Below are positions 22,026 through 64,000 of a stretch of 64,000 nt of DNA, one piece after another. Origin of the DNA: Heptranchias perlo (lineage: Eukaryota); the NCBI RefSeq assembly GCF_035084215.1, contig NC_090340.1, positions 2,666,001 through 2,730,000 of the forward strand, in the 5' to 3' direction. Positions within the stretch are counted from its first letter, which is position 1, and the number at the start of each line of letters is the position of its first letter. The notes under the pieces are model-generated. The model was not told the origin of the DNA, did not search any database, and was given only the letters and a program-made list of their open reading frames with translations. A program made the translations under genes and the position numbers.

Positions 22026-22059
22026 TTGCCCGCGCCTGCCCCGGTAGTGTTAGAAAGAA

Positions 22060-31430: not shown

Positions 31431-33036
31431 CATCGCATTGTTTACATTTATTTTCAGCCAGTTTTTTCAAAGTAAGACAGCGTGCTACCATGCAGTGTTG
31501 AATAAACTGTAACTTGTCATTGATAACTTTAGGTAAATGTACTGACATGATTGTTTTATATATTGGGAGAGTACACGGTACTTTTACCTCTAGATTGAGA
31601 CTGAATCTACACCAACTGACCCTGAATGTCTCTCCATTCTCCCTACTGTGAGGGTCTTGCACGGAATGTTCTTGGCAAGCGTCGGCCCACACCATAAATT
31701 GACATTAAATTGGTAAACTCGCTGAAAGGGCACAAGAATGGTGGGTACAGGAAATGCTAATGTCGCACATGTGCCCGGTGATTTAGTGAGGCATATTTTG
31801 AGATAGAATAGAGGGAGCTCTCCACTGCCACCTATATCTGCCACGGTACAGCGTGAATCTAACATGGGTGGCATAAATAGACAAATGATTTTCTTTCCCC
31901 AGCACTTATATGCCTAACTTGAAAAACGAAGTTATTTGTTGAACGCTAAATCTTTTAACTAATTAGTTCACTGAAGGCTAAATTAAATATTACTAACATG
32001 GAACAACACATTGACTTTGACATTGAGTGGGGATCATAAATGAGTCAGCCGCTTGCTATGATTACATTTTATACTTTAATAGTTTTCTCCCTCGACAGGG
32101 AGTCATGAACATATCGGAAACATTACAATTAACGAGAAATAAACAGTAGAAAGATCAGCATCTGAAAAAGAAAGCTAAGCTGAAGTCTCGGATATAACCT
32201 CTCATGCCATTGATGTTAGATCCTATGGTGGTTTTCTCCCATTTTCTATTTTGATTTGAGATTGACAGAACTGTCGGGTTGGACTTTATTTTTTCGCTCT
32301 TTGTTCTGTTAGACGAGCCAAGGTTCTTTCCTTATTGATTCGCTTACGCTTTTCGTTCTCTTTAGGTTGTCATCTTTGGTAATAACCTATGCCATCCACA
32401 GCAATCAATTTTCAACCGTCCCTTCCATGGTCTGTAAAATCAAAGCGTTTTCCGGTTAACTGATGACCTGGATTAGTCAGCAGAGTGATGCATGAAAGCG
32501 AACGCGGTCAGCTGTAACTGAAGATTCAACGAATATGTTATTTGAATAATTAATATATCAATACCGGTATATCATTATTCAAATTGCACAATTTTTATTT
32601 CGAACCGTATCTTGCACAGTATTTTCTGCCAGTTCAGAGCGTCACCGAGGTGTGTAATTAAAAATTAATTAAAACTCTGTATCTAACCCGTGCTGCATTT
32701 ACCCTGGGAGATTTTGATCGGATAATGTAGAGGGAGCTTTACTCTGTATTTAAAACGTGATGTACCTACTCTGGCAATGTTTGCAGAGGGAAATTAGTTC
32801 ACATCCACCCCCTGCTGTACATGACTGGGAATGTTCAAAGCTGGTGTTGGGAATGATGAGGATTTGTTGATTTTGCTCAGTGGCCCCTCGTGCACATGAA
32901 AATAAACATTTACCAACAATCTAATCGTGCAAATTACAGGGTAATCGTGTAAGGCAAAGATTTGAAATATGCTCAGTTTTGGATCACATTCTTTTTACAC
33001 ATCAAGCATTTTCGAAAATGTACGAGAGAAACGCAC

Positions 33037-33080
33037 CCGTTCTTCGAAGTGTTGAGATCCCCCTTGGTCTCTGCGTGCGC
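33037..33080 (-). CDS. Ig receptor copy 1, cytoplasmic exon 1 (GARRDQGGSQHFEER)
   Basis: ttcattag acceptor, gtgcgt donor, 44 nt, phase 1/0; paralogous 44-nt exons at 51259-51302 and 60965-61008. Confidence 0.75.
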
Positions 33081-33513
33081 CTAATGAAATACAACATTTA
33101 ACTTTGACCGTGAATCAGGAAGTGAACCACCGAGAGCAGGGAAATCAAAATTAGTCTCAGCTGATAACATCTCGAAGATCACAGCTCATGAAAAGTTTTG
33201 AAAATTTCATCGCAGCTTCCCCCCCGCCCCCATCCTTGGTTGAACCGTCTTGTGTTAAAGTTCCTGAAATGAATTCAGCCTATAACACAGGGAAGCGAAA
33301 CACCACCGAAAAATGCAAATATCGGTGCTCGTTAATCATTTACTTTAAGTTCATTCACAAATCATCTATTTCAGATTATGGAACCAAATACAACGGTTCA
33401 ATATATCCACAGAATTCCCCATTAGCAGCTTTAACGCGCCTTCCTCTGCCCAGCATCATGTTCTCTTTTTATTACAAATGTATCACAATGAAACTGCAGA
33501 TTTGGCTCCTTAC

Positions 33514-33630
33514 CTTTACAGTAACTGAGTTGGTAACTCTTCCCAATGACGGCGACGAGGGCTAGAAATATCAGTGCACCCCCTGTACATCCAGAAATCA
33601 GTAGGTAAGGATGGTTCGGGTGCACACTGC
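33514..33630 (-). CDS. Ig receptor copy 1, transmembrane exon (SVHPNHPYLLISGCTGGALIFLALVAVIGKSYQLSYCK)
   Basis: AG acceptor, gtaagg donor, phase 1/1, hydrophobic helix followed by Lys. Confidence 0.88.
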
Positions 33631-34347
33631 CTACATGATTATTAATAATAATAATCATAATACCAGTACGACTAATCATGATAATAGTAATAAACAATGC
33701 CCACCTCTTCATTTTAGGCAGTGTTATGCAACCAGATTATTGAACGTGTTAGTTGTACGATTTATATATTCAGTGCCTCCAAGGCAGAGCACGAGGACTG
33801 AGACTGTTAACTTGTGCAAGCCGATTTACTTCGATATGTGAACAAAATATGTTTATTGATTCTTGTAAATTGCCTGCATTACATGATCAAAATGTAATTT
33901 GTGGATTTTCGTTGACAAGATAATGGTAAACTTTGAAGCTAAGAAGACTATGGCGCAAATTGCAGCCGCATTATTCATTCTCGGGTGATATCTCACGGAG
34001 AGCGCTGACACAGGGACTGATCTGTATCGGTAGCTTATTAATAAAGGAAAATACTTAAATGTATGAGAAAAATGCATTCTATCTATTTTCTCCGTGTTAA
34101 ATGAGGAGGAATTGAATCTGATGAAGGTTAGTTTAATTCAGTTTATAATTATAATCTCTAGAGTACACTATTCCTCTGATGGGAGACGTTTGCCTCTTTT
34201 AACCGTTTTACAAATCCGCAAATAGAAGCAATCTTTAAATTAACATTCTTTAAATAAATTGTATGCCAGAAGCATAAAGAAATTAGGGCAAATGAAGCAG
34301 ATTTAAAGTGATCAGTGGTTTCCAATATTAAAATGTCAGCATCTTAC

Positions 34348-34656
34348 CTGGGTTAGACGTGGAATCAAAGTAAACAGCCACGGCTGGACTCTGCAGTGTG
34401 AGGTGAGACACGACACAGGTATAGACAACCCCGCTCTGGGCTGGCTGTGTCGCTTTCAAACTGCTGGAAGCTTCATACATTCCTTCCGAATTCAGCTTTT
34501 TAGTATTGGTGATTCCAGTCACAATGTTGGTGTCATTTTTATACCAAGTGAAGGTGAGAGACTCCGGGTAGAACTCGGCTGTTGCACACACAAGCATCAG
34601 AGCAGATGAGTTGGTTCCGGACACTTTGGGGGACAGTCTCACAGGTTCTGGGGAAG
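34348..34656 (-). CDS. Ig receptor copy 1, C1-set domain exon
   Basis: LVCATAEFYPESLTFTWYK and YTCVVSH C1 signatures; ctgcag acceptor, gtaaga donor, phase 1/1. Confidence 0.93.
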
Positions 34657-35336
34657 CTGCAGAACAAGGCAGAGAATACACTGATTGTCTGGACTCTGCT
34701 AATTTAGTCCGGTTTGGCGCTCAGTCTTCTTGACTATAACGGCGTAACTCTCGGTCACAAGTACAGAGATAACCACTGACAGGAACTGACTTGGATTGGT
34801 AGGGTCGCCATTTGCTTGTTAGATGATAAGATGATTCCAATTCACACTTTGATTACTGAACAATTCGAAATAAGATTCTTCCCATAACTTTCTAGACTAA
34901 AATGCGAACGATTCACAACCGTGTTGCAGTAACAGGAGAATGTATTTCAGTGCGAGTAGACATTCAGGCCGTCGCTGCATTGTGCTTAGTCCACGGAAAG
35001 AATTAGATTTAGATTAAACTCAGCAGCTTTTTGCTCTGTTTTATTATTGAGCAGCGTTTAGTAAATAGGCAAAATTTATTCAGGTAATATCAATTCAAAC
35101 TGTTCGCGTTAAGAATTGCAAATTTGGAACAAAGGGGCAAAATCATTACCGCCCAGACAAGTGGAACTTTAACCCCGGGATTATTGTAGGGGCAGGAAAA
35201 AACATTTTGTCCAAAATTGTAAAAAGGAAAAAAAAACTTGCTGGAAATTTGGTTCTGATGAAATGGCGGGAAGTGAGATTTGAGGGGATCAACCATGGAT
35301 CTGAATGGCCAGTCACAGCCTCTTCCATCCTTCAAA

Positions 35337-36195
35337 CATTTCCTCCCAATTCAACTTTTAAATGGTGTTGACCCCAGTCACAATATTGGTGTCATTTTTA
35401 TACTATGTAAAGGTGAGAGACTCCGGGTAAAATACCGCCATTTCACACAATAGAGTCGGAGCAGATGAGTTAGTTTCGGACACTTTGGGAACTAGTCTCA
35501 CGGGTTCTGGGAAGCTGTGGAACAGCATAGAGAATACACTGATTGTTTAGACTCTGCTGATTTAGTCAGGTTTGGCGCTCAGTCTTCTTGAATATAACAG
35601 TGTGACTCTCGGCCACATGTACAGAAATAAACGACTGATCGAAATTCGCCATTTGTTTGTTGGATGATACGATGATGCCAATTCACACTTTGGTTACGTA
35701 ACAAATTCGAAATAAGATTCTCCCCATAACTTTCTAGATTAAAATACGGACGATTCAGGATCGTGTTGCAGTAACAGGGGAAAGTGTTTCAGTGGGATTA
35801 GACATTCAGGCCGTCGCCGCTTTGTGATTCGACTACGGAAAGAATTAGATTTACATTTCAAGTCAGCAGCTTTTTGCTCTGTTTTATTATTGGGCAGGTT
35901 TTAGTAAATTGACAAAACGTATTCCGGTAATATCAATTGAAACTGTTCGCGGTAAGATTTGTAAATTTGTTACAAACGGGCAAAATTATTACTGTCCAGA
36001 CAAAAGATATATTCATCCCGTGACCATTGTGGGTGCGGGAAAAATAATTTTGTCCAAAATTATCCAGAGATGAAAAAAACAACTTGCTGGAAATGTAGTT
36101 CTGAGGGAATGGCCGGAAGTGAGGTTTGAGCAAATCATCCATGGAGCTGAATGAGGGAAGTGGCTGAATGTCCAGTCACAGCCTCGTTCACCCTG
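35337..36195 (-). pseudogene. Tandem duplicate (~859-bp period) of the 5' half of the C1 exon plus upstream intron; pseudo-exon ~35337-35514
   Basis: Aligns to ~34478-35335; keeps an AG acceptor but has a 1-nt deletion and TGG->TAG at the conserved Trp. Confidence 0.85.
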
Positions 36196-36619
36196 ATACA
36201 TAGCAAGGCTAACATTAGACTGGGAATATATTATCACTGTCAAGAGGGCTCCTCATTCGTTTTTGTTAAGTTTATAATTGAAATCGAGAGTCACAGCCTG
36301 ACCTCTGTCCACAGAGCAGCGCGTGAGATACCTCGGAGAAGGCTGGTTCACAAACATTGGGTTCGACATTCTTGCAGTATAACTCCGGCTGGTGTCAAAT
36401 CTAGTTTTAAAAATACTATTTTAAACTTATCTGGAGTTTTTCAAATATTCCTAGATTGTAGACCCTCTGTTTCTGTTCTCTAAACGTATAACCATATATG
36501 TACAGAGCTCTCAAGCGGAAAGAGGAATCATACATCACACCTTGCAGTATTTGGTGTCATTATTGTTACAGTTACAATTCAGTCTTGTACTCAATGAACT
36601 GAGATAAAACCGATAGGAC

Positions 36620-38271: not shown

Positions 38272-38583
38272 CGTACACAGCAAGCTTCGATCCGGTTCCG
38301 TTTACGATCCTGTTTCCTGCGTATCTCACTCCGCAGTAATAGAATCCGGAGTCGGAGACACGCACACTCAGGATCTGGAAGGAAGCCTCTCCGCTTTTTA
38401 AATGAAAGAATCGTTTTCTGCCGTCAGAACCTGGGTTTAATAAGTGTTTGTCGCCAAGTCTCCACCAATAAACATTCACATCTGAATTATCCTGGAGAGA
38501 GCTCGTCAGACATTGGAAGGTAATGTCTGCACCTGAAATCACACTGGTGCTTTCAGGAGTTTGGAAAACTTCAGCGGGAGCAA
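38272..38583 (-). CDS. Ig receptor copy 1, V-set exon with germline-fused J-like strand
   Basis: ITFQC, VYWWR, DSGFYYC, NGTGSKLAV; ttatag acceptor, gtaaga donor, phase 1/1; no RSS seen. Confidence 0.93.
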
Positions 38584-38640
38584 CTATAAAACAGTAAAAA
38601 AACATTAATTACAAAATAAGGATAAAAGATAGTTAGGCAC

Positions 38641-38670
38641 GGATAGATAAATAGATAGATAGATAGATAG
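38641..38670. repeat. (GATA)n microsatellite in the leader-V intron
   Basis: gatagataaatagatagatagatagatag. Confidence 0.85.
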
Positions 38671-38708
38671 CTAGAAGAAAGAAAAGGAAAAAGAAAGCCG
38701 GAGAATAC

Positions 38709-38754
38709 CTTTGTAAATAATCCCCAGGGCCCATATGTACTGACACACAAACAT
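38709..38754 (-). CDS. Ig receptor copy 1, leader exon (MFVCQYIWALGIIYK)
   Basis: ATG at 38754; 46 nt ending in a phase-1 donor aag|gtattc that joins the V exon in frame (..YKVAPA|EVFQTP). Confidence 0.78.
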
Positions 38755-40300: not shown

Positions 40301-40511
40301 CTCCGTGGAGATAAGAACATAAGAACATAAGAAATTGGAGCAGGAGTAGGCCAATCGGCCCCTCGAGCCTGCTCCGCCATTCAATAAGATCATGGCTGAT
40401 CTGATCCCAACCACAAATCTAAAGAACACAAGAAGTCGGAGCAGGACCCGGCCACATAGCCCCTGGGCCCTCTCCGCCACCCACAGGGCATTGACCGATC
40501 CGAACTCAGCT

Positions 40512-43454
40512 TCATGTCCAATTTCCTGCCCGCTCCCCATAACCCCTAATTCCCTTTACTTCTAGGAAACTGTCTATTTCTGTTTTAAATGTATCTAATG
40601 ATGTAGCTTCCACAGCTTCCTGGGGCAGCAAATTCCACAGACCGACCACCCTCTGAGTGAAGAAGTTTCTCCTCATCTCAGTTTTGAAAGAGCAGCCCCT
40701 TATTCTAAGATTATGCCCCCTAGTTCTAGTTTCACCCATCTTTGGGAACATCCTTACTGCATCCACCCGATCAAGACCCTTCACAATCTTATATGTTTCA
40801 ATAAGATCGCCTCTCATTCTTCTGAACTCCAATGAGTAGAGTCCCAATCTACTCAACCTCTCCTCATATGTCCGCCCCCTCATCCCCGGGATTAACCGAG
40901 TGAACCTTCTTTGTACTGCCTCGAGAGCAAGTATGTCTTTTCTTAAGTATGGAGACCAAAACTGTATGCAGTATTCCAGGTGCGGTCTCACCAATACCTT
41001 ATATAACTGCAGCAATACCTCCTTGTTTTTATATTCTATCCCCCTAGCAATAAAAGCCAACATTCCGTTGGCTTTCTTGATCACCTGCTGCACCTGCATA
41101 CCAACTTTTTGATTTTCTTGCACTAGGACCCCCAGATCCCTTTGTACTGCAGTACTTTCCAGTCTCTCGCCATTAAGAAAATAACTTGCTCTCTGATTTT
41201 TCCTGCCAAAGTGCATAACCTCACATTTTCCAATATTATATTGCATCTGCCAAATCTCCGCCCACTCACCCAGCCTGTCTATATCCCCTTGCAGGTTTTT
41301 TATGTCCTCCTCACTCTCTACTTTCCCTCCCATCTTTGTATCATCTGCAAATTTTGATATGTTGCACTCGGTCCCCTCCTCCAAATCGTTAATATAGATT
41401 GTAAAGAGTTGGGGACCCAGCACCGACCCCTGTGGAACACCACTGGTTACTGGTTGCCAGTCCGAAAATGAACCATTTATCCCAACTCTCTGCTTCCTGT
41501 TTGATAACCAATCCTCCACCCATGCCAGAATATTACACCCAATCCCGTGATTTTTTATCTTAAGTAATAATCTTTTATGTGGCACCTTGTCGAATGCCTT
41601 CTGGAAGTCTAAATACACTATGTCCACTGGTTCCCCTTTATCCACCCTATACGTTATATCCTCGAAGAACTCAAGCAAATTTGTCAGACATGACTTCCCC
41701 TTCATAAAGCCATGCTGACTTTGTCCTATTAAATTATGCTTATCTAAATGTTCCGTTACTGTCTCCTTAATAATAGACTCCAAAATTTTACCCACCACAG
41801 ATGTTAAGCTAACTGGCCTATAATTTCCAGCCTTCTGCCTACTACCCTTTTTTAATAACGGTGTTACATTAGCAGTTTTCCAATCTGCCGGGACCTCTCC
41901 TGAGTCCAGGGAATTTTGGAAAACTATCACCAAAGCATCCACAATCCCTACTGCCACTTCCCTCAAGACCCTAGGATGGAAGCCATCAGGTCCAGGGGAT
42001 TTATCCGCCTTGAGTCCCATTATTTTACTGAGTACCATCTCCTGAGTGATTTTAATCGTATTTAGCTCCTCCCCCCCGAGAGTCCCCTGTTTGTCCAGTG
42101 TTGGGATATTCTTAGTGTCCTCTACTGTAAAGACTGAAACAAAATATTTGTTCAGCATTTTTGCCATCTCCATGTTTCCCACCATTAATTTCCCGGTCTC
42201 ATCCTCTAAGGGACCTATGTTTGCCTTAGCCACCCTTTTTCTTTTTATATAACTATAGAAACTCTTGCTATCTGTTTTTATATTTTTTGCTAATTTCTTT
42301 TCATAATCTAACTTCCCTTTCTTAATCAATCCTTTAGTTACTTTTTGCTGTCTTTTGAAGAATTCCCAATCTTCTATCCTCCCACTAAGTTTGGCTACCT
42401 TATATGTCCTTGTTTTTAGTCGGATACTATCCTTGATTTCTTTACTTAGCCACGGGTGGCTGTCATTTCTTTTACACCCTTTTTTCCTCAGTGGAATATA
42501 TTTATTTTGAAAGTTGTAAAATAACTCCCTAAATGAACACCACTGCTCATGTACCGTCTTACCCTTTAATCTATTTTCCCAGTCCACTTTAATCAATTCC
42601 GCTCTCATACCATCATAGTCTCCTTTATTCAAGCTCAGTACGCTTGTTTGAGAATCAACCTTCTCACCCTCTAATTGGATATGGAATTCAACCATGTTGT
42701 GGTCGCTCGTTCCAAGGGGATCCTTAACTAGGACATTATTAATTAATCCTGACTCATTAAACAGGACCAGGTCCAAGGTTGCCTGCCCCCTTGTAGGATC
42801 AGTTACATACTGCTCAAGAAATCCATCCCTGATGCACTCAATGAACTCGTCCTCAAGGCTGCACTGCCCAATTTGATTTGTCCAGTTAATATGATAATTA
42901 AAATCCCCCATAATTATGGCTGTTCCCTTATTACATGCCCCGACTATCTCCTGATTAATACTTCTTCCAGCAGAGTTGTAACTATTAGGAGGCCTATATA
43001 CTACGCCCACTAATGTTTTTTTCCCCTTATTATTCCTTATCTCCACCCAAACTGTTTCATTATCTTGATGCTTTGTCCCAATATCATTTATCTGTATTAC
43101 AGTGATTCCTTCCTTTATTAACATAGCCACCCCACCTCCCCTTCCTTCCTGCCTGTCCTTCCTGATTGTTAAATACCCTGGCATATTTAATTCCCAGTCG
43201 TTGTCACCCTGCAGCCATGTTTCTGTAATGGCCACAAGATCATACCCATACGTAGTTATTTGTGCCGTTAACTCGTCCATTTTATTACGAATGCTACGTG
43301 CATTCAGATAAAGAACTTTCAAATCTGTTTTGTGACGCTTAGTTCCTGCTTTTTCCTTTTTTAACACTTTACCTATTACTCCATACCTTCTGTCCCTTCC
43401 TGTTACGCTTTCCTCTCTCTCCCTGCTCAGGTTCCCAACCCCCTGCCACTTTAG
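40512..43454 (-). CDS. CR1 ORF2: APE endonuclease plus reverse transcriptase (frame open from the ORF1 overlap)
   Basis: LYLNARS, ITETWL, MGDFN, SDHN, PQGSVLGP, FADD; the 951-aa track starts at GTG and the frame is open 31 codons further upstream. Confidence 0.95.
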   Translation of the reverse strand, partial: LKWQGVGNLSREREESVTGRDRRYGVIGKVLKKEKAGTKRHKTDLKVLYLNARSIRNKMDELTAQITTYGYDLVAITETWLQGDNDWELNMPGYLTIRKDRQEGRGGGVAMLIKEGITVIQINDIGTKHQDNETVWVEIRNNKGKKTLVGVVYRPPNSYNSAGRSINQEIVGACNKGTAIIMGDFNYHINWTNQIGQCSLEDEFIECIRDGFLEQYVTDPTRGQATLDLVLFNESGLINNVLVKDPLGTSDHNMVEFHIQLEGEKVDSQTSVLSLNKGDYDGMRAELIKVDWENRLKGKTVHEQWCSFRELFYNFQNKYIPLRKKGCKRNDSHPWLSKEIKDSIRLKTRTYKVAKLSGRIEDWEFFKRQQKVTKGLIKKGKLDYEKKLAKNIKTDSKSFYSYIKRKRVAKANIGPLEDETGKLMVGNMEMAKMLNKYFVSVFTVEDTKNIPTLDKQGTLGGEELNTIKITQEMVLSKIMGLKADKSPGPDGFHPRVLREVAVGIVDALVIVFQNSLDSGEVPADWKTANVTPLLKKGSRQKAGNYRPVSLTSVVGKILESIIKETVTEHLDKHNLIGQSQHGFMKGKSCLTNLLEFFEDITYRVDKGEPVDIVYLDFQKAFDKVPHKRLLLKIKNHGIGCNILAWVEDWLSNRKQRVGINGSFSDWQPVTSGVPQGSVLGPQLFTIYINDLEEGTECNISKFADDTKMGGKVESEEDIKNLQGDIDRLGEWAEIWQMQYNIGKCEVMHFGRKNQRASYFLNGERLESTAVQRDLGVLVQENQKVGMQVQQVIKKANGMLAFIARGIEYKNKEVLLQLYKVLVRPHLEYCIQFWSPYLRKDILALEAVQRRFTRLIPGMRGRTYEERLSRLGLYSLEFRRMRGDLIETYKIVKGLDRVDAVRMFPKMGETRTRGHNLRIRGCSFKTEMRRNFFTQRVVGLWNLLPQEAVEATSLDTFKTEIDSFLEVKGIRGYGERAGNWT

Positions 43455-44401: not shown

Positions 44402-44411
44402 GTTCACGTCA

Positions 44412-51258: not shown

Positions 51259-52830
51259 CGGCTCTTCGCGATGGTCTGATCTTTCCCTATCATTCTGCGC
51301 TTCCAAATGAATGAAGTTGAAGACTTGCAATGAAGCATTTCATTATCTTAAAATACACTTCGGGGTAGATCGAATGTAAAGTATAACATGATCTTGATAG
51401 CACAGTTTAAGGAATTGATTGGATTCCGACCTGTATTTGACAATAGGACGGGATTGTTCAGCTTCCGATGGGCTTTGCGCACAGCGGGAGGCTGATTGGA
51501 AAATCGCAGGGTCACTACACACATTTCTCTGTTTATTGTCCTGAATGGACGGAAAAACGCACTCAATGAAAGTTGATTTTCCAATAACGATCCCGCCGAG
51601 TTCCAGACTCCGCCGCTGGCTTGGGGGCCTTGGGAAATTCCACTCCATTTTATCCAACAATTTAGAAATTCGAATCTATCGTTACACCAGTAGTAACGAA
51701 ACCTGTATTAAAAACATTCGTTTATATAAATTGCAACAACTAATCGGACTGAGATGACTGGGAAGGGTCCTTCATATTTTAAAACCCAGGATAAACTTAT
51801 ATCCACCAAGCGCCCCTGTTCCCGTGAGACAGTGTAACTGTAATTTGAACCGTTCAGTTACAATCCACTAACTTTCTCTTTACATGTAACAGAAAGTTTT
51901 CGCTTACTCTTTGAAAGTTGTGTTTACTTTAGTAAAAACACTAAATGATTCCTTGCTTTTATTTTTCGTTCTGAGGCATCGGTTCCCCATGGTGAGAGCT
52001 AACACCGAAAATACCAACCCGCCCCCTGCACATACAGAAATCAGCAAGTAACGGGAAATGTCACCATCTACAAGAGTTAGATGTAATGTATAAATATGAA
52101 GCAGTGCACTGTTCAATTCAACACGATCATGACTTAAAAGATCACAAATATTTTAATCAATTTTTCTATTTCAGTACTTTTACATTTAAGCTATAGTTTT
52201 ATGAAACAGAATGAAAATGCTGAGCTATGTTTAATTTTTTCATGCTTGACGAACAAGTTTTTTTTACCTTATCTTGCCTTAAACTCAAATCTGATTTTAT
52301 CCAGGTTTCCTGTTGAAATAAGACTGCGATATAAGGGGGTAATTGTGACTTTGTGCGTTTCTGTAAAACTGGTGATAGCGAAGTGGCAGCCCGTTTTACC
52401 TCACTTCCGATTTTTATTTCCATTTACCGTGTGATAATAATTAGTTTGTTATTTTATACAACGGCTAATAGCTGTTGCTAAAATTACAGCTTGCTGCAGA
52501 TTGCGGGCACGGTTTAAGGAATGCAGGAGACAGCGGTGCAACTCCAACGTGTTAAGACTTGGAACGGCAGGATGCGAGTTATCGCCCCACATTGCCCCAG
52601 GCATCAGTTCCACATCTCGACCGTGACTCCCACTTATCCAGGAGTTGCCGAACAACAGTTGCAGAGGCTTTGGAGTGAAATATCTGGCAGAAATCCACGA
52701 ATAGGGGTATCTGAGTGAAAGTTAGCACATGGGGGTGGGGATAACCGCAAACGGTTCTATTTGCGGGATAATGAAATCTGCAATCTGCGTTGGGGTAGGT
52801 GATAGTGTAAGTGGACGTTGGAGGATGTAG
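51259..52830 (-). pseudogene. Ig receptor copy 2 pseudogene (C1 3' remnant ~52788-52830, TM exon 51957-52067, cytoplasmic exon 51259-51302)
   Basis: TM LLISVCAGGGLVFSVLALTMG; C1 donor lost, TM donor is GC, cytoplasmic acceptor AG->GG; introns homologous to copy 3. Confidence 0.8.
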
Positions 52831-53749
52831 GTTATTGGAGGATGAAGGGATACAAATAAAAGGCGGGTAAATGGAGTTAAGGTACAGATTAGCCATTATC
52901 TGATTGAATAGTGGAACACGCTGTAGGCGCTGACTGGCCTGCCCCTGCTTGTTTGTTTGTATCTAAGAACAATTACGGGATGAAATTCGCCCCGGTACTA
53001 TCTGTAGTCCGTATAGATACGAGGCTTAACCTCATATCGAATTTCCTTATACGGGCGTTATTTTGAACAACGGAGGCTATGTTATCCCATGTCTTCGTAT
53101 CTAAGAGTCCAAGACTTGGAAAGAGTTAAAGTAAAACGTTAACTGCTGCAAAGTATCTTAACAAAATAAAGGAAGATGCTGAGCAAGATGCAACGACTGA
53201 AATATGTTGATGAGTGTGGCACAATGCACACCCATAGGTGGGAAGCAAGGGCGCAAAATTGGGCCGTGTAGCGCCCATTGTTTCGGCGCTGCACGGTCTC
53301 TCCGACATCCAAGACGGCGTTTTGGATGCGCATCCACGTTTCCTGCGTGACGTGCGCCAGACGCCATCTTGGTATAGTAGTTAGCGCATGCGCTAATACC
53401 GGACCCTGGCAGCATGTAAAGTAGGGAGAAAATGGCTGCAATCAGTGGGCAACGCTGATTTAAAGTGATACACACCATTTTCAACCTTAACGCTCAACTC
53501 AACGGACATTCTTATTCCCGACCCATCTAAACGTTTCTTACAGCGCTTGAAGGACCCCCCACCAGCGCTATTTAAAGGGGCCACACAGTTGTTGCAGGAT
53601 TATTGGACCTGGCTGCTGGAGGAGTAGGAAGTGATTTTGAAGCTCCCAACTCTTATTCAGAGTTCCTACACTACTTTTGAGGGGCTTTGGCAGGTACTGC
53701 CTTACGGGTCAGAAAGTTACAACCCTGTGGAACAACATTCCTGTCAACC

Positions 53750-54820
53750 ATGGGCAGTCTGCGAGGGCTCCCATTGGGCATTGAGCATGACTGAGAGCAT
53801 GCAGAGAGGCCACGCACAGTGGGTCAAGCTGCGAGGAGATGGAGGACGAGGAAGCCCAGCATACTGAGCAGGAGGCCCTACTCAATGAGTGCCTTCCGGG
53901 ATCAATTTTCTTACCTCAACATGACCGAGGGGGATTGCATCCGACACCTAAGGTTCACCAAGGATGCCGTCACCGAGATCTGTCAACTGGTGTGGCCACA
54001 ACTGCAGCCTCAGAGCAGGGCGAGGACAGCATTGCCTGTGGCTGTGAAGGTCATCGTGGCGCTTAATTTCTACAGCTCAGGATCATTTCAGGCTTCAGTT
54101 GGCGACGTGTGCAACATCTCGCAGTATGCAGTACACTGCTGCATAAGGGAGGTCACAGACGCACTGTGCCACATGAAGAACAGGTTCATCACCTTCCCTC
54201 TCAACAGAGACAATCAGAATGAGCGAGTGCGGGGGTTCACCCACATTGCTGGCTTCCCCATGGTGCAGGGTGCCATTGACTGCACACACATTGCCCTGCG
54301 TGCCCCGCACATCAACTCAGCTGTCTTCGTCAACCAAAAGGGTTTCCACTCCCTCAACGTGCAGCTGCTGCCCGAGCACACGCATTGAATCATGGAGGTC
54401 AATGCCCGCTACCCTGGGAGCAGTCACGATGCCTTCGTCATGCGGCAGTCCAACGTGCCAGCTATCTTTCACCTGACTCGGCAAGTCAAAGGCTGGCTAA
54501 TGGGCGACAAGGGCTATCCCGTCATGACTTGGCTCACGACACCGGTCAGGAACCCACGCACACGTGCGCAGCAGGCCTATAATGAGAGCCATGCTGGCAC
54601 ACGCAACATTGTGGAGCAGACCATAGACCTCCTCAAACAACGCTTCCGCTGCCGAGACCAGTCTGGAGGAGCCCTGCAGTACTCCCCTGAGAGGGTGGGC
54701 AGATTCGTGGTGGTCTGCTGCATGCTGTACAACCTCGCCATCATGAGGGACCAGCCTTTACCACCAATAATTGCAGAAGATCCTGAGCCAGAGGTGGAAG
54801 AGGAGGGGGAGAAGTGGTGA
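53750..54820 (+). pseudogene. Harbinger DDE transposase (HARBI1-like) with in-frame TGA at 53792 and 54386
   Basis: GAIDCTH, KGFHSLNVQ, PGSSHD, GDKGYP, RNIVEQT..LLKQRFRC in one frame. Confidence 0.92.
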
Positions 54821-55138
54821 TGGAGAGGAGGGGTTGGATCTGGAAGAGGAAGTGGAGGAAGACGCAAGGGTGCAACAGGAACCACATGCCTTGTCTGCAA
54901 GGGCTGTGCGTGCTCGCCTGATCCGTGCCCACTATCAATAATTTCAACTACATCCCCCAAGCCACCAACAGTCCTGCATTCCCCATCTTTCCCCTCCCAC
55001 AAGACAATCAAATCGTCCTCCATCTGATTACACATTGGTGTCCCTCTCAGCTCATTGCATAATTAAAAACAATCACCAAATGCAAAATCAAACTCTCATT
55101 TATGGATGAATAAATGAAATTATGCAAACATGATTGAA

Positions 55139-57038
55139 CTATTCGCCCATGTGCATGACCTTAATGTCTGTTGTCCTTGTGCCTTTACCTATCCTAGTGC
55201 TTCTACGAGGTACTTCCCCAGTGGCTGAAGCATGGGTGGTGGAAGGCTGCTGGCCTTCAATGGAGAAACGTGCAGATGGCCTTGGAGGACGACCTCGACC
55301 AGCTCTGGGCCTGGACGGCCCGGCTTCAGACTGCACCATCTCAATATGGGCTGCAGCAGTCTGGCCTGGCTGGCTGGGAGGCAACAACAGGGGCACTGGC
55401 AGAGTGGCAGGGGTGGGAACAAGAATGCTGTCGGCCTGAGAGAGGACAGCACATCTGGCTGCCATGGCGCCACTGCCACTCTCCCAGGGTGGCGCCTCAG
55501 CAATCGGCTGGAGAACGGATTGCTGGAGTGCTGTGACACCCTGGAAGCCCCGTTCCACAGTGGTCACCAGAACCATGATCGCAGCAGTCTGAGCTTCCAA
55601 GGCAGCAGTCTGAGCTGCAAATGCAGCAGTTAGACCATGGATGGCAGATGTTTGTGCTGCAATGGAAGCTGTGACATCAGTTATCAGACGCTGCATCATG
55701 GTGGGTTCCACAGGTGCGCTGATGAAGGTGAGCACCCGTTCCATTTTGGAAAGGATGGGCTCCAAGCTCTGCACAAAGCCCTGCGCCAAGTTGGAGCTGG
55801 ACTCCTCCATGTCCCTTCTCATTGTGCGCAGGTTTTCTGGCAGGCTTTCCAGTGCCCCAAGCATTTGTTGGTGTGCACCCATCAGCCGTCTTCTGTAGCC
55901 TGGCCCATCGAAATCCTCATCTGACTCCTCTGTTGCAGAACTAGTGAACGACCTCGCCCTCCGGTGAGCTGGGACCTGTGGTATCCATTCCCTCCACCCG
56001 GCTCCTGATCACTTGTGCTCGGTGTCTCATCACGTGCAGATCCCTCCTGTAACCTAATCTCTAAAGGACACGCAGTGTCAGTCTCTGAGCTGATGGAAGC
56101 AAGTGTCAGATCGAGTGCTGATGTGGCTTCAGTGTCCCCCTCCTCCTCCCCCACCTCCTCCCCCTCCTCCTCCGAGGGTGCTGTCACGTGTTCTTGGGTA
56201 TCTGCAAATTCAAAGGGAAACAGGTTGAGTTGTGGAGTGGGGAGAGGAGCAAGTCAGAGGTGTGTGCTGAGAGCATGTGCAGCACGTGAGTCAGAAAAGA
56301 TTATGGGAGGAGGGAGATGTGCAAAAGGAGAAGGAGCATTAGATATGCAGAGATCCCTTCATTGGGACCTTCAGCGCAGCACGTTGGCTGCAGCGACGGT
56401 CTGCCCAATGATCCGCAACACCATCTCCTCTAGGGGGTTGAGGACGTGCAGACGTGCCCGTCCAGCCTAAGGTCTCTCCTGCTGCCAGGTGTTATATATC
56501 ACCTTCTCCTGCAATACAGAGGAGAGTGTCAGTGAGTGTCCTGCAAGGTGTGTGGGTGATGTGCCTGTTGTGTGGTCGAATAGCTGCCAGTTTGTGTGGC
56601 TTGTGAGTGGTGGTTGTGTGGCCTGCAAGTGTGCTACTATGTGCAGGTGAGATGCAGCATTTGGTATGGATGGGCAGTGTTTGTTGGTGGGTGGGTGACA
56701 GGAGGTGTCGTGCATGGAGCATTGGTGCAGTTGGTAGGATGTGCCACTTAACACTTGTATTCACTCACCTTGACCAACTCATTAAACGTCTTCCGGCACT
56801 GCACTCACGTGCATGGTGCAATGCTCCTAGCATTCACCTCCTGCACCACAGCCTGCCAATGCCTACACAGCTGTAGTGTGAAGGGTCTCCAGCCACCCTG
56901 CGGGTACATGCATGCCCTCCTTTGGTCCACGCCTTCCACCAGGGCCTCGAGAGCATCGTCAGAGGATCATGGAGCCCTCTATCTTGCCAGTGCAGCTACT
57001 CACAATGCCCTTCACCTAGTTGGCTGTGTATCTGCCAT
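55139..57038 (-). pseudogene. Harbinger Myb/SANT-like partner gene (spliced, several stops)
   Basis: Exon 57038-56769 reads RAP*SSDDALEALV...W..V..EVN..CT*VQCRKTFNEL followed by gtgagt; further ttgcag acceptors near 56509 and 56202; low-complexity C-terminus. Confidence 0.8.
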
Positions 57039-59810: not shown

Positions 59811-59888
59811 TTAATGTTTATCCCTGGACGGTTTTTTGGAACTGGTCAATACTATTGCATCGTAAGGCGCGTTTGCATTCGCGTCTCT
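59811..59888 (-). CDS. Ig receptor copy 3, putative terminal cytoplasmic exon (RDANANAPYDAIVLTSSKKPSRDKH*)
   Basis: tccctgcag acceptor, phase 0 matching the previous donor, one YxxI motif. Confidence 0.5.
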   Translation of the reverse strand, partial: RDANANAPYDAIVLTSSKKPSRDKH

Positions 59889-60964
59889 CTGCAGGGACTG
59901 AAATTCGAACTAGTTATTCAGTCATGTTGTTCGTTCAATTGAGCGGGCTCCTCGTTCAGACATTCTGAAAAGGAGCACCGACCGGTATATCGCCGGTCCG
60001 CGGTGCCTGATTTTCGAGTCATTTAAATTAATAAACAAAAAAGTGCAGCGGTGACCCATGATTTAACGACTTGTGAACGCCCGATCGTATTAGCCTGTCC
60101 GTTACTGTTCAAACACAGCGATATAAGGAAGGTTAGGGATAAGAACCGGCCATTTAGCCTTGAATGTACAGAGCAGAACAGTCAAGGCTAAATCTATTTG
60201 CAGCCCACCATTGTTGCAGAAAAAAAAAAGCGTGGACCGATTAGATCCTTTATGAAGATTAACAATATAAAATGTGAAGATTTATACATAGTCCAAATAG
60301 TGGTGCAATAATTATACAATAAATGGAATTGAATTAGCACAGAGCGACTTAGAAAGAGTCTGGGTCTCACCATAGTCAGATTACTATCAATAGCCCGGCC
60401 CTTAAATAACTAGTAGAATTCTAGGACATATAACCAGAACATCAAATTCAACAGGTCGTACGAAAGCTTCAAAATTAACTTGTGGAGCACATTTAGAATA
60501 TTACGTTCACTTTCCCACCAAAACTGAAAAAAAGAAATATAAATATGCAGCTAAGAATGAAGAAAAAGAGCAAGGCTGAGCCTAAATGTAGAAGGGTAAG
60601 TTAGGAAGAGGATTCGATGCGCCGACTCTTCCCATACTATAAATAAAGTGGTTAAGAACCTCATTAAAATTTCTACAATATTCAGTGATTTGGATACGGT
60701 GGACCGGATTATTGTTGCAGTCTTTACCAAGCTGCAGTTGATGTAAATGGGAAATAAATCGACAACAGACATAAGGAAAACACTTCCTTGATAGACTCAG
60801 ACAGATTTGGGATAATTTTCTAGACAGGGTATTGGAGGCAAACTCATTAAAATGAGGCCGGGCATGTTGTTACATGAAATAGATTGAAACGCTCTCAGCT
60901 GATTCTGGAAACAACAATACATATTTACATGTGATATAAGTTAGGATCAATCAAGTAAACATAC

Positions 60965-61745: not shown

Positions 61746-61815
61746 ATAATTCCCAGGTAATCTCTACGTAATTCTCTTTCAGGCTGTTTTTAATTAACAA
61801 ATAAAAAATTCTTAC

Positions 61816-61929
61816 CTTTAATTTTCTTTAATTGACATCGCTTCCCAATAATGAGAGCCAGCATTAGAAATACCAAACTACCCCATACACATCTGGAAAT
61901 CAATAAGGAACCGCTGATGTTGTCACGAT
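61816..61929 (-). CDS. Ig receptor copy 3, TM exon with intramembrane Arg (DRDNISGSLLISRCVWGSLVFLMLALIIGKRCQLKKIK)
   Basis: ttttag acceptor, gtaaga donor, phase 1/1. Confidence 0.88.
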
Positions 61930-62727
61930 CTAAAATATTAATGTAAAGTATATAAATATGAAGGATATGTCCAAAATTATCACCCAATCATAACCATTAG
62001 CATGGATTCTTATTTGAAAATTATTCTCATAAACGCTGAAAGAACAGAGATATTTTAATCAATCTTTGCTCTTTTATCTTCTTCTTCGCGAAAGTATAGA
62101 TTCTTTTCTCTCAGATCTAATTTTTATCCTGGCTTCTTCTTGATGATATGATTGTGACTGAAAGTGAATTTTGTACAGTAACTAATAGATGTTGCTAAAA
62201 TTACAGTTTGCAGCAGATTGTGAGCACGGTTTGTGGAATGCAGGAGACGGCGGTTGTGCTCCAAACAGTAAGGCACGAGTTACTGCCCGTTACTGCTCCA
62301 AGGGCCACTTCCACACCTGAGCCGTGACTCCAGGAGGTACGGTGCAATGGGGCAGGAGACCCCGAACAGCAATCGCAGAGTTCTTGGAACCTGATTAAAA
62401 GTGAATAATTGTAGCCAGTAGTCTTACACTTTGACGGATTTAAAACCCGGTGAAAGAACCGGAGTAGAACAACTGATGAGAAAGTACAATTTGCCCAACC
62501 CGAAGAGAGTCGTAGCAAAGGGTTCTATCGCGCGATAACTGAGATCTGCTATCTTATCTTTAGGGTAGGTGATGATGTAAATGACCGAGGCTTTGGAGCA
62601 GAACACCTGGCATAAATCCACGGTTAATGGTATTTGAGTTAAACACATGGTGGGGTCAGGGCCAGGGTGGGGGAGCGATCACAGTAATCGGTTCTATTTG
62701 CAGGATAACTGAGATCTGCTATCTTAC

Positions 62728-63033
62728 CTATGGGATAGGTGACAATGTGAGTGGCCGTGGCTGGAATTTGGAATGTAACGTGAGACACCAGGCAGGTATA
62801 AACAGTCCCGGTTGGAACAGGCGTATCATCCAAACGGCTGGAAGCTTCATATAGTCCATCGGTGATGAGTTGTATAACGTTACTTATCTCTGTTGTAGTT
62901 TTGGTGCCATCTTTATACCAAGTGAAGGTGATATTCTCCGGGTAAAACGGAGATGTCGCGCACACAACTGTAAGAGACGCAGATGAATCCTTTTCATGTT
63001 CTTGAGAGGTAATTTTCAGCGGAGTTGGCGGAA
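62728..63033 (-). CDS. Ig receptor copy 3, C1-set exon
   Basis: [26 protein letters not shown]; ttctag acceptor, gtaaga donor. Confidence 0.93.
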
Positions 63034-63957
63034 CTAGAAAAGTTGAGGAAAGCAACGTTACTCGGGCATCAGTCAAGGTCATCAACAGTCGCTTTGTTTC
63101 GTCCTAATCCGGACAGCACGATGAGGGGAGCTATTCACTCTGCGCTATCGGTAGCGACATCGTAAACGGCATTTTCGTAAACGTGCACTTTATTTCGGAG
63201 TAATTTTAACTTTTATCCCCGGGCGATAAACGGGTGACGGCTGATGGGAAAGAAAATCACCAGGGTGTAAATCGGACGGCCGATTCACTATCGCCTGTTT
63301 TGCGGTACCGCTGCCGATCAATTCCACCCCTTTAAGTATAGCAACTGATGATAAAGTACAATTTTCCCAAACGCGAGGGACTTTGACACAAAGTTTCTGG
63401 ATAATATCTTATTTACTGGAGACTAAAAAGATGATGAAAATATGGGGTACGTGGCTCAAGTTACTGAGTGTGGACTTTAACTGTTAGTCACACCCGGCTT
63501 TCAACGCTCTTAACATATAGACCATTAAATTACAAATGGGTGAATCTGAATTCCAATTGAAACAGTCAGCCCTCCGAACCAGTGCACACAAAATCAACCA
63601 TCAAACAGGATCACATTTTGCTTACGGTGGCAGAAAGCGTTCGTATCCAATACAATAAAACAAACACAAGTCTTTAACGGATATTGTAATTTTAACTTCA
63701 CATACTTTTTGCATACACGCTGACTGTGTATTTTTGGGGTAAAATTACTAAAAGACAATGCTCTTGTTGATTAATATTGCTGAAATATTGTAATACCCAT
63801 TAGCATGTAACGTGTATCAGCCTACAATGCAATTTGAATTTATTCGTATAAAACGATTGGAATTTAAGTTATAATGTGAATCCTTCAAAGCACACCCGAG
63901 AAATGATTCGAATATTACAGTCACAGAGATCGCATTCGTCGCTATTTTCATACTTAC

Positions 63958-64000
63958 CCCATACTGTTAAATGTGATCCCGTTCCGTTTCCAGCTATTCT
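63958..64000 (-). CDS. Ig receptor copy 3, 3' end of the VJ exon (RIAGNGTGSHLTVW), truncated by the window edge
   Basis: J-like GxGSxLTV followed by phase-1 donor g|gtaagt. Confidence 0.85.

What the first reader, a model, noticed from the sequence alone, without database searches (positions are those of the whole stretch)
32405..64000. Tandem cluster of non-rearranging VJ-C1-TM antigen-receptor-like genes
Seen: three same-strand paralogs with shared exon architecture (phase-1 Ig exons, 111-117-nt TM exon, 44-nt cytoplasmic exon). V and J-like strands are in one exon and no RSS was seen. Established: C1-set domains are largely confined to Ig/TCR/MHC/B2M/tapasin/SIRP-type proteins, and germline VJ(-C1) genes such as NCR3/NKp30- and SIRP-like genes are regarded as relatives of the pre-RAG antigen receptor. 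Inference: a lineage-expanded, probably poorly characterised innate receptor family with TCR-chain topology undergoing birth-and-death evolution.
Basis: partly seen in the sequence, partly recalled or inferred. Interest (0 to 1): 0.85.

Follow-up and report, generated by a model that had tools for sequence, protein, structure and literature searches.

The report
Shark non-rearranging VJ-C1 receptor gene cluster
This stretch of a shark genome holds one intact gene, one broken piece and one cut-off copy of a cartilaginous-fish-only family of cell-surface receptors built like a single T-cell-receptor chain but fixed in the germline; databases name the family inconsistently and I found no paper that describes it.

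Summary
The Ig exons are real, and all lie on the minus strand. Gene A (32405-38754) is intact with six exons: split leader, one-exon V+J, C1-set, TM, a 44-nt cytoplasmic exon and a last exon. A decayed partial C1 copy sits in its V-C1 intron. Gene C (59.8-64.0 kb) has C1, a TM exon with an embedded Arg, and a conserved tail exon; its V is cut by the window end. "Gene B" (~51.8-52.8 kb) is only a 3' fragment with no V or C1, so "three paralogs with shared architecture" is partly right.

No RSS was found. RNA contigs from the same sample show V->C1->TM splicing, but they belong to a ~92% identical paralog matching Heptranchias perlo P0173, not to gene A.

Relatives number over 100 V+C1 models, all from sharks, rays or chimaera. 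Automatic names conflict (SIRP-alpha-like, Ig-lambda-like, tapasin-related, NCR3LG1-like). Many carry ITIM/ITSM tails; others have short tails with a TM Arg/Lys. This is a paired-receptor pattern.

The family fails the tests I could run for SIRP, UrIg, germline-joined IgL, TCR and MHC-linked NCR3. I could not read the paper on the shark NCR3 family (Kinlein 2021). Function as paired innate receptors is inferred.

The parts
38709..38754 (-). Gene A leader exon (MFVCQYIWALGIIYK, donor AAAG|GTATTC, phase 1; split leader)
   Evidence: signal-peptide/donor scan. It matches the leader MFVCQYIWVLGIIYKV of homologue P0173.
38272..38583 (-). Gene A V(J) exon, 312 nt, phase 1 to phase 1. Cys-Trp-YYC framework with the J-like NGTGSKLAVY strand in the same exon.
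   Evidence: Pfam V-set 9.5e-11; sequence. The RNA contig of the paralog ends this exon at 38272. 82-84% identical to P0173.
35330..35617 (-). Decayed partial duplicate of the C1 exon, with about 105 nt of its upstream intron, inside gene A's V-C1 intron. It has a 1-nt deletion, TGG>TAG at the invariant Trp and a TAA stop, and is truncated after about 185 nt.
   Evidence: 82% nucleotide identity over 289 nt; tblastn with stops; skipped by the spliced RNA contig.
34348..34656 (-). Gene A C1-set exon, 309 nt, phase 1
   Evidence: Pfam C1-set 1.6e-13; acceptor and donor; RNA joint 38272->34656 with GT..AG on the minus strand.
33514..33630 (-). Gene A stalk/TM exon, 117 nt (…PYLLISGCTGGALIFLALVAVIGKSYQLSYCK). 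Neutral TM with a Cys at the membrane edge.
   Evidence: The RNA contig joins C1 to this exon with an in-frame 3-nt difference in the paralog. It matches P0173.
33037..33080 (-). Gene A 44-nt cytoplasmic exon (G-ARRDQGGSQHFEER), phase 1 to phase 0
   Evidence: P0173 has GARRKEEESQHFEER at the same place.
32405..32431 (-). Gene A last coding exon (TMEGTVEN, then stop)
   Evidence: P0173 ends TMKETVENRLL.
51825..52818 (-). Unit B, a 3' gene fragment. It holds a remnant of a C1 3' end plus intron (52818-52664), an intron block (52537-52451), a TM exon 52067-51957 (…RYLLISVCAGGGLVFSVLALTMGNRCLRTKNK, like the TM of the long-tailed, inhibitory-type H. francisci clade: P0197, whose sisters P0193/P0196 carry ITIMs), and a downstream block 51861-51825 whose acceptor is mutated. 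There is no V and no C1.
53600..56500 (.). PIF/Harbinger-type DNA transposon remains lying where unit B's 5' exons would be expected (limits approximate; the DDE ORF is 54392-54817 on the + strand).
   Evidence: Pfam DDE_Tnp_4 7.3e-23
63958..64000 (-). Gene C: last 43 nt of the V(J) exon (…NGTGSHLTVW, donor G|GTAAGT). The rest lies beyond the window.
62728..63033 (-). Gene C C1-set exon, 306 nt, phase 1
   Evidence: Pfam C1-set 2.4e-12; splice sites; 76% identical to H. francisci P0197.
62515..62591 (-). Tandem duplicate of gene C's C1 3' end and intron start, with the donor GT changed to AT
61816..61929 (-). Gene C stalk/TM exon, 114 nt (DRDNISGSLLISRCVWGSLVFLMLALIIGKRCQLKKIK), with an Arg embedded in the TM
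   Evidence: The same LLISRC motif occurs in P0228, P0032 and P0201.
59814..59903 (-). Gene C conserved cytoplasmic exon. It is open in two frames (…DANANAPYDAIVLTSSKKPSRDKH or …RRECKRALRCNSIDQFQKTVQG), and both frames are used in H. francisci models. With the phase-1 TM donor, the second frame is predicted here.
   Evidence: P0228 and P0207 tails.
40311..44024 (-). CR1-like LINE (esterase-type ORF1 plus APE-RT ORF2), 99.1% identical to an inverted copy at 26797-30512. The two copies flank gene A.

Best explanation
The region is part of a tandem cluster of a cartilaginous-fish-specific multigene family of type I membrane receptors. Each ectodomain is one germline-fixed V(J) domain followed by one C1-set domain, the layout of a single TCR or Ig light chain. 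A roughly 10-residue stalk, one TM helix and a variable tail follow.

The genes do not rearrange. They are spliced leader-VJ-C1-TM-tail.

Across the family the ectodomain is combined with one of two signalling ends:
- a long tail carrying ITIM (LTYAAL-type) and ITSM (TEYAxV-type) motifs; or
- a short tail with an Arg or Lys buried in the TM helix.
I therefore read the family as paired inhibitory/activating innate immunoreceptors, working like SIRP, NITR or KIR. The V domain would bind a ligand. ITIM forms would recruit SHP-type phosphatases. Arg/Lys forms would signal through an acidic-TM adaptor.

In this window:
- Gene A is an intact member of a subfamily conserved from sharks to skates, with a neutral TM and a 35-residue tail lacking a motif.
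- Gene C is an Arg-TM (activating-type) member.
- Unit B is the decayed 3' end of a member whose TM matches the long-tailed, inhibitory-type H. francisci clade.

Shown: the exons, domains and splice pattern (through a paralog's RNA and an annotated homologue); the family's range; the tail and TM dichotomy; and the absence of RSS. Inferred: ligand binding, signalling partners, leukocyte expression, and whether gene A itself is expressed.
For: - Domains: V-set 9.5e-11; C1-set 1.6e-13 and 2.4e-12; C1-set clusters in the ESM Atlas.
- Exon structure and phases.
- Splicing: RNA contigs join 38272->34656 (GT..AG) and C1->TM. After applying their listed differences, they translate to P0173 of Heptranchias perlo.
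- P0173 has the same six-part layout, including the leader, the 44-nt exon and the last exon.
- No RSS.
- Family census: 87 hits below 1e-10. All named members are chondrichthyan.
- Invariant positions are the two Cys pairs, WW, the G of the DSG motif before YYC, and His in YTCxVSH; the G-x-G of the J-like NGTG motif is nearly invariant (at least 90%).
- Tails: at least 30 distinct models have ITIM/ITSM tails, and at least 15 have an embedded TM Arg/Lys with a short tail.
- Trees: gene A pairs with P0173 inside a starred 9-member clade holding shark and batoid orthologues. Gene C falls in a starred clade with H. francisci P0193/P0196 (ITIM), P0197 (long tail, no canonical ITIM) and P0203 (short tail).
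- Structure: the model of P0173 has mean pLDDT 86. Its best structural matches are antibody light chains and TCR beta over both domains.
Against: - No transcript of gene A, B or C themselves was seen. The RNA contigs at these exons are about 92% identical and belong to a paralog.
- Gene A has neither an ITIM nor a TM charge, so its own signalling mode is unknown.
- No ligand, cell type or adaptor is known. The paired-receptor reading rests on motifs.
- dN/dS between gene A and the expressed paralog is about 0.6 (V) and 0.4 (C1), computed from an incomplete list of differences. That fits relaxed constraint as well as function.
- The homodimer prediction gave no verdict.
Confidence: 0.72

Rival explanations
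1. These are the cartilaginous-fish orthologues of the SIRP (signal-regulatory protein) family, which has simply lost one C1 domain.
For: - NCBI's commonest automatic name for members is 'tyrosine-protein phosphatase non-receptor type substrate 1-like'.
- SIRP gamma and SIRP alpha are among the better solved matches of the C1 exon (6.6e-11).
- Both are V-C1 receptors with ITIM forms and charged-TM forms.
Against: - SIRPs have V-C1-C1. Every full-length family model that I looked at has at most one C1, and some have none.
- No SIRP chain appears among the best 60 solved matches of the V exon or of a V-only family profile.
- The SIRP score for C1 is summed over two domains.
- Synteny could not be tested.
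Confidence: 0.12
2. The family is a branch of the NCR3 (NKp30) family that kept a C1 domain. It would then already be covered by the published 'shark NCR3 family'.
For: - For the V-only family member P0105, human NKp30 is the best single-domain, full-length solved match (6.7e-6).
- A frog protein named NCR3 is among the nearest non-chondrichthyan hits.
- Some family models are V-TM without C1 (P0087, P0120, P0132, P0233).
- Eight divergent nurse-shark NCR3 genes exist in GenBank (PMC12227049).
Against: - Bona fide shark NCR3 genes sit in the MHC class III region: white shark chromosome 19 at about 102 Mb, beside AIF1 and PRRC2A. In sawfish they are named 'NCR3-like' (supplement of PMC10751288).
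- The white-shark family member P0007 is on a 193.5-Mb chromosome.
- No hit of the family profile carries an NCR3 name or comes from nurse shark.
- Gene A's V matches Ig lambda and TCR alpha (about 3e-6) better than any NKp30 chain.
- The 2023 and 2025 papers treat NCR3 as a VJ gene and UrIg as the novel VJ-C1 gene.
- I could not read Kinlein et al. 2021.
Confidence: 0.15
3. They are germline-joined immunoglobulin light-chain or TCR genes, made when RAG joined V and J in the germline. This is known for many shark Ig clusters.
For: - Several members are auto-named 'immunoglobulin lambda-1 light chain-like' or 'TCR beta chain-like'.
- Foldseek's best matches are light chains.
- Germline-joined IgL clusters are common in sharks (established knowledge).
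Against: - Identity to solved light chains is only 20-28% across the listed Foldseek matches, and V matches are only about 1e-6.
- A TM exon and cytoplasmic ITIM tails are present.
- The family has its own invariant WW[KR]xG motif and a near-invariant NGTG motif, with Asn in place of the J-region Phe/Trp.
- There is no RSS and no unjoined member.
Confidence: 0.03
4. The copies in this window are dead relics. Gene A would be an unexpressed recent duplicate, and only paralogs elsewhere in the cluster would be functional.
For: - The only RNA contigs over gene A's exons come from the paralog.
- Unit B is clearly a fragment.
- A decayed C1 exon, a duplicated C1 end, LINEs and a Harbinger element show heavy turnover.
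- dN/dS is 0.4-0.6.
Against: - All six exons of gene A are open with canonical splice sites.
- dS of about 0.11 with no disabling change argues for constraint.
- Only three small contig-level runs from one sample were available, and contigs drop rare transcripts.
Confidence: 0.2

Closest known systems
SIRP family (SIRP alpha/beta/gamma)
   Same: Non-rearranging V domain with a J-like strand, followed by C1-set domain(s), a single TM, and paired ITIM-tailed and charged-TM forms. SIRP C1 domains are among the better solved matches.
   Different: SIRPs have two C1 domains and this family has one or none. The V domain shows no special similarity to SIRP V. The family is found only in cartilaginous fish.
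Teleost novel immune-type receptors (NITR)
   Same: A large, fast-evolving cluster of germline VJ-type receptors with inhibitory (ITIM) and activating (charged TM) members. Sequences that I take for NITRs from their V motifs, one of them confirmed as teleost (eel), are the next-best group after the family in the V search.
   Different: NITRs have V only, or V plus an I-type domain, and no C1-set domain. They are known only from bony fish (my own knowledge of the NITR literature).
NKp30 / NCR3
   Same: A germline VJ domain and a TM Arg in the activating form. One family subgroup (…YYCRVEG…GNGTGTRLIV) has human NKp30 as its best solved V match.
   Different: NKp30 has no C1 domain and is MHC class III-linked in sharks. 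In white shark this family lies on another chromosome. Gene A's V is no closer to NKp30 than to Ig or TCR V.
UrIg / UrIg2 (non-rearranging shark VJ-C1 genes)
   Same: A shark-lineage, one-exon VJ with a split leader, followed by C1-set domains. UrIg2 (PDB 9dmx) is the top solved hit of gene A's C1.
   Different: UrIg2 has nine to eleven C domains, and UrIg also has several (the paper compares its N-terminal three). They are single or low-copy genes in the MHC or the antigen-receptor complex (PMC12227049). The UrIg2 score is the sum of three weak domain matches of 18-23 bits each. This family has one C1 and dozens of copies.
Ig light chains / TCR chains
   Same: The same V-C1 two-domain ectodomain, which gives the best structural matches over both domains. 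Phase-1 exons and a split leader are also shared.
   Different: There is no RSS and no rearrangement. Identity is only 20-28% across the listed matches. The J-region Phe/Trp is replaced by Asn within an N-G-T sequon. The cytoplasmic tails carry ITIM/ITSM motifs.

Membership tests
Pfam V-set / C1-set immunoglobulin domains | Score above the curated Pfam threshold | tested here: met
   V-set 42.3 bits (cut-off 26). C1-set 51.2 and 47.4 bits (cut-off 21).
Non-rearranging 'VJ' genes | V framework and a G-x-G-T/S-x-L-x-V J-like strand in one exon, with no RSS | tested here: met
   YYCGVRYAGNRIVNGTGSKLAVY is contiguous in exon 38583-38272. No heptamer/nonamer pair was found in 32-64 kb.
SIRP | Three extracellular domains, V-C1-C1 | tested here: not met
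   A single C1 in gene A, gene C, P0173 and every full-length model that I looked at.
SIRP | V domain groups with SIRP V | tested here: inconclusive
   No SIRP among the best 60 solved matches of the V exon or the V profile. No tree with SIRP sequences could be built.
NCR3 / NKp30 | Single VJ domain directly followed by stalk and TM (no C domain) | tested here: not met
   A C1 exon is present in genes A and C. A few family models lack it.
NCR3 / NKp30 | Linkage to the MHC class III region | tested here: inconclusive
   White-shark NCR3 genes are at about 102 Mb of chromosome 19. The family member P0007 is on a 193.5-Mb chromosome.
NCR3 / NKp30 | V domain closest to NKp30 | tested here: inconclusive
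   Met for the subgroup member P0105. Not met for gene A's V or for the family V profile.
UrIg / UrIg2 | VJ followed by several C1-type domains; a single gene in the MHC or the antigen-receptor complex | tested here: not met
   One C1 only. There are dozens of paralogs per genome, at least 15 models on one H. francisci chromosome. Family description from PMC12227049.
Germline-joined IgL | Secreted V-C chain without TM, with high identity to a rearranging IgL isotype | tested here: not met
   TM exons are present. Identity to light chains is 20-28% across the listed Foldseek matches.
TCR chains | RSS-flanked V and J segments; conserved basic residues in the TM; a connecting-peptide Cys | tested here: not met
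   No RSS. Gene A's TM is neutral. The Cys lies at the membrane edge (LLISGC), and the stalk is only about 10 residues long.
Paired inhibitory/activating immunoreceptors (functional class) | Closely related ectodomains joined either to ITIM tails or to a charged TM with a short tail | tested here: met
   In H. francisci, P0193/P0196 (ITIM LTYAAV plus TEYAQL) and P0203/P0228 (LLISRC-type TM, short tail) share one starred clade with gene C. Binding of phosphatases or adaptors cannot be tested with these tools.

The most novel reading that the evidence does not exclude
This family, and not the multi-domain UrIg genes, is the closest surviving non-rearranging relative of the TCR and Ig chains. It would be a VJ-C1-TM chain of exactly the topology that the RAG transposon is thought to have split, kept in cartilaginous fish as a paired innate receptor and lost in bony vertebrates, where V-only NKp30 and the NITRs might be trimmed offshoots.
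Probability: 0.1. Interest if true: 0.85.

Novelty: new variant of a known kind. Interest (0 to 1): 0.6.

Why it matters
Non-rearranging genes that combine a VJ domain with a C1-set domain are the main material for reconstructing how T-cell and B-cell receptors arose. Two such shark genes, UrIg and UrIg2, were reported as notable findings in 2023 and 2025.

This family offers a third example, and the one that looks most like a TCR chain: one V, one C1 and one TM. It is present in sharks, rays and chimaera as dozens of genes with inhibitory and activating-type versions, yet it sits in databases under contradictory names.

If it is indeed undescribed, two things follow:
- Cartilaginous fish gain a candidate counterpart of SIRP, NITR or KIR-type innate recognition.
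- There is a concrete gene set on which the origin question can be tested, using phylogeny, chromosomal paralogy and dimer structure.

The window itself adds a worked example of the family's turnover: an intact gene, a decayed exon copy, a gene fragment and transposon insertions.

Tried and rejected
- Homodimer prediction for the P0173 ectodomain (residues 17-228, two copies) gave 'no answer' with score 0.00. I do not use it either way.
I therefore have no flanking genes, no synteny and no direct count of paralogs on the window's chromosome.
- The search for homologous proteins restricted to the V region of P0005 returned only six close relatives, so it supplied no outgroups. I could not bring TCR, IgL, UrIg, SIRP or NCR3 comparators into a tree. 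The trees show only relations within the family, plus NITR-like and frog 'NCR3' outgroups.
- Papers not held: Kinlein 2021 on shark NCR3 (PMC8273117); Flajnik 2012 on B7H6/NKp30 (by DOI and as PMC3709836); Ohta and Flajnik 2015 (PMC4594805); UrIg 2023 (PMC10530332).
- A search for 'PRARP' returned only unrelated uses of the acronym. From memory, chicken PRARPs are V-only, so I did not pursue them.
- My first candidate for gene C's tail (61151-61138, GMEP-stop) was set aside. I prefer the exon at 59903-59814, which is conserved with H. francisci models. Its reading frame remains unresolved.
- I looked for V or C1 exons of unit B in 52.4-61 kb and for extra tail exons below 51.8 kb. None was found.
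Exons were searched one by one by reference. Whole-protein steps (structure, complex, alignments) used the natural homologue P0173 and other database proteins.

Full report
**What is in the sequence**

The window is vertebrate DNA rich in satellites and CR1-type LINEs. All Ig-type exons lie on the minus strand between 32.4 and 64.0 kb. A pattern scan and tblastn of each exon against the whole window found one V exon, two intact C1 exons, one decayed C1 copy and three TM exons. Nothing similar lies in 1-32 kb. Pfam calls the V exon V-set (9.5e-11) and both C1 exons C1-set (1.6e-13 and 2.4e-12). The ESM Atlas agrees.

**Gene A (32405-38754) is complete**

Reading the DNA gives six exons:
- a leader exon, 38754-38709 (MFVCQYIWALGIIYK);
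- a 312-nt exon, 38583-38272, holding the whole V domain and a J-like strand (…YYCGVRYAGNRIVNGTGSKLAVY);
- a 309-nt C1 exon, 34656-34348;
- a 117-nt stalk/TM exon, 33630-33514;
- a 44-nt exon, 33080-33037;
- a last exon, 32431-32405.

All splice sites are canonical. The Ig and TM exons are phase 1. The V-C1 intron holds a partial duplicate of the C1 exon and its upstream intron (35617-35330). It is 82% identical and carries a 1-nt deletion, a TGG>TAG change at the invariant Trp and a TAA stop.

**Genes C and B**

Gene C has:
- the last 43 nt of its V exon at the window edge (NGTGSHLTVW);
- a 306-nt C1 exon, 63033-62728;
- a duplicated C1 end whose donor is lost, 62591-62515;
- a 114-nt TM exon, 61929-61816, with an Arg inside the helix (LLISRCVWG);
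- a tail exon near 59903-59814.

The tail exon is conserved with Heterodontus francisci models and is open in two frames, and both frames are used by those models.

Unit B has no V and no C1. It keeps only the last roughly 70 nt of a C1 exon with intron homology to gene C, a TM exon (52067-51957) whose GT donor is changed, and a downstream block with a mutated acceptor. A PIF/Harbinger transposase (DDE_Tnp_4, 7.3e-23) lies where its 5' exons should be.

**Not rearranging**

V and J are contiguous in one exon. A scan for a heptamer (at most 1 mismatch) and a nonamer (at most 2 mismatches) with 12 or 23 +-1 spacers found nothing on either strand of 32-64 kb. Shuffled sequence gives 0.5 on average.

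**RNA evidence**

Only three small runs from one sample were offered, kept as contigs. Laid on 33000-38900, one 541-nt contig joins 38272 to 34656. The skipped part begins GT and ends AG on the minus strand, and the join passes over the decayed C1 copy. Another contig joins the C1 exon to the TM exon with an in-frame 3-nt difference.

These contigs are only about 92% identical to gene A. After I applied their listed differences to gene A, the translation equals protein P0173 of Heptranchias perlo throughout the C1 region and almost throughout V. Two things follow. The sample is H. perlo or something very near it. The splice pattern is shown for a close paralog, not for gene A itself.

P0173 (286 aa) has the same six-part layout:
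- leader MFVCQYIWVLGIIYKV;
- GARRKEEESQHFEER from the 44-nt exon;
- TMKETVENRLL from the last exon.

Gene A and this paralog differ by dS of about 0.11, with dN/dS of about 0.6 in V and 0.4 in C1. These figures come from an incomplete list of differences.

**The family**

A phmmer search of the V exon against 1.84 billion representatives gave 356 hits, 87 of them below 1e-10. The single-domain, full-length matches are proteins of about 230-450 residues at 40-67% identity.

Every one whose source I could look up is from a cartilaginous fish. The genera are Heterodontus, Heptranchias, Carcharodon, Mustelus, Scyliorhinus, Chiloscyllium, Hemiscyllium, Pristis, Leucoraja, Mobula, Hemitrygon, Hypanus and Callorhinchus.

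Their automatic names contradict one another. They include SIRP-alpha-like, Ig lambda-1 light-chain-like, tapasin-related-like, NCR3 ligand 1-like, CD276, MHC class II beta-like and TCR beta-like.

Alignments show invariant Cys pairs, an invariant WW, the G of the DSG motif before YYC, and His in YTCxVSH. The G-x-G of NGTG(S/T)xLxV is nearly invariant. The next-best groups in the V search are sequences I take for teleost NITRs from their V motifs (one confirmed as eel) and a frog protein named NCR3.

**Signalling ends**

Among 108 V+C1 models fetched, many have long tails with canonical ITIM (LTYAAL, LTYASL, VAYVTL) and ITSM (TEYAEV, TVYAKI) motifs. At least 15 others have short tails and an Arg or Lys well inside the TM helix. 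Examples are LLISRCVWF, ISRCVMGG, LIFRSALGG and LIIGRVGG.

In H. francisci, both kinds share one well-supported clade with gene C: P0193 and P0196 carry ITIMs, while P0203 and P0228 have the LLISRC-type TM. This is the signature of paired inhibitory and activating receptors.
- Gene C is of the Arg-TM kind.
- Unit B's TM resembles that of P0197, the long-tailed member of that clade.
- Gene A belongs to a clade with one or two members per species from sharks to skates. It has a neutral TM, a Cys at the membrane edge and a short tail without a motif.

**Structure**

For whole-protein work I used the natural homologue P0173. Its AlphaFold model, built on a 53-sequence alignment, has mean pLDDT 86, two Ig domains and a TM helix. 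Foldseek's best solved matches are antibody light chains, with a TCR beta chain also listed. They align over about 215-230 columns, covering both domains, at 20-28% identity (18% for the TCR beta chain). The homodimer test gave no verdict.

**Comparison with known families**

By sequence, the solved matches are as follows:
- Gene A's V matches Ig lambda and TCR alpha V at about 3e-6.
- A V-only family profile matches TCR alpha, CD79b and VNAR best among single V domains.
- C1 matches IgG CH1 and MHC class II beta-2 best as single domains. UrIg2 ranks first only because three weak domain scores are summed.

*UrIg and UrIg2.* UrIg2 has nine to eleven C domains and UrIg also has several. They are single genes in the MHC or the antigen-receptor complex (PMC12227049). 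The architecture does not fit.

*SIRP.* SIRPs have two C1 domains, and the V shows no special likeness.

*Germline-joined IgL and TCR.* Both are excluded by the TM and ITIM tails, the low identity and the lack of RSS.

*NCR3 (NKp30).* This is the most serious candidate for 'already known'.
- For: one V-only member, P0105, has human NKp30 as its best solved single-V match (6.7e-6). Some family models lack C1.
- Against: bona fide shark NCR3 genes lie in the MHC class III region, on white shark chromosome 19 at about 102 Mb. In sawfish they are named 'NCR3-like'. The white-shark family member sits on a 193.5-Mb chromosome. No hit of the family profile is named NCR3 or comes from nurse shark.
- Limit: I could not read Kinlein et al. 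2021 on the shark NCR3 family, so I leave about 15% for this.

Full-text searches aimed at the family and its nearest named relatives found no paper describing a cartilaginous-fish V-C1-TM paired receptor family.

**Verdict**

It is a non-rearranging, lineage-expanded family with one-chain antigen-receptor topology, and it is turning over by birth and death.

I read it as a paired innate receptor family that works like SIRP or NITR but is a member of neither. It is a new variant of a known kind. Function, expression of the window's own genes, chromosomal paralogy and the relation to the rearranging receptors remain open.

The scan's first-stage readers noted the Arg in copy 3 on this window (s1-882501, which I confirm) and another leader-VJ-C1-TM gene 84.7 kb beyond the window (s1-882468, not checked).

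Noticed in passing
window 26797-30512 (+) and 40311-44024 (-): Two inverted copies of a 3.7-kb CR1-like LINE (esterase-type ORF1 plus APE-RT ORF2), 99.1% identical to each other, flank gene A. They are either very young insertions or the arms of an inverted duplication.
   Followed up: partly
window 54-2494 and 18072-22008: Two large, strand-skewed satellites: a 32-nt unit in 77 copies and a 34-nt unit in 116 copies, each 92-93% matching. The first reads as a long false ORF (GGGGSYTHWERRRGE…).
   Followed up: no
window 3905-4623, 10295-12020, 22035-22548: The same 66-67-nt tandem repeat unit (…GGGACAGTGTAGAGGGAGCTTTACTCTGTATCTAACC…) occurs at three places. It looks like the tail array of a SINE or LINE family.
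   Followed up: no
window 53600-56500: PIF/Harbinger-type transposon remains (DDE_Tnp_4 ORF at 54392-54817, + strand). A second long ORF lies on the opposite strand (55142-55882) with no Pfam match.
   Followed up: partly
window 59814-59903; proteins P0207 and P0228: One cytoplasmic exon is open in two reading frames. H. francisci gene models use both: …TDADAKAPYVAIPL… after the TM exon, and …RRGCKSALRCNTIDRLQT when C1 is spliced straight to it, which gives a TM-less and possibly secreted form.
   Followed up: partly
proteins P0087, P0120, P0132, P0233: Some family models go from the V(J) domain straight to the TM, with no C1 domain. That is the NKp30 layout, produced either by exon skipping or by genes that lost the C1 exon.
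   Followed up: no
window 38291-38299 (gene A) and family alignments A1-A3: The position of the conserved Phe/Trp of the antigen-receptor J motif (FGxG) is an Asn inside an N-G-T glycosylation sequon in most family members. A glycan there would sit on the face that Ig and TCR V domains use to pair.
   Followed up: no
window 38641-38680: A (CTAT)n microsatellite lies inside gene A's 125-nt leader intron.
   Followed up: no
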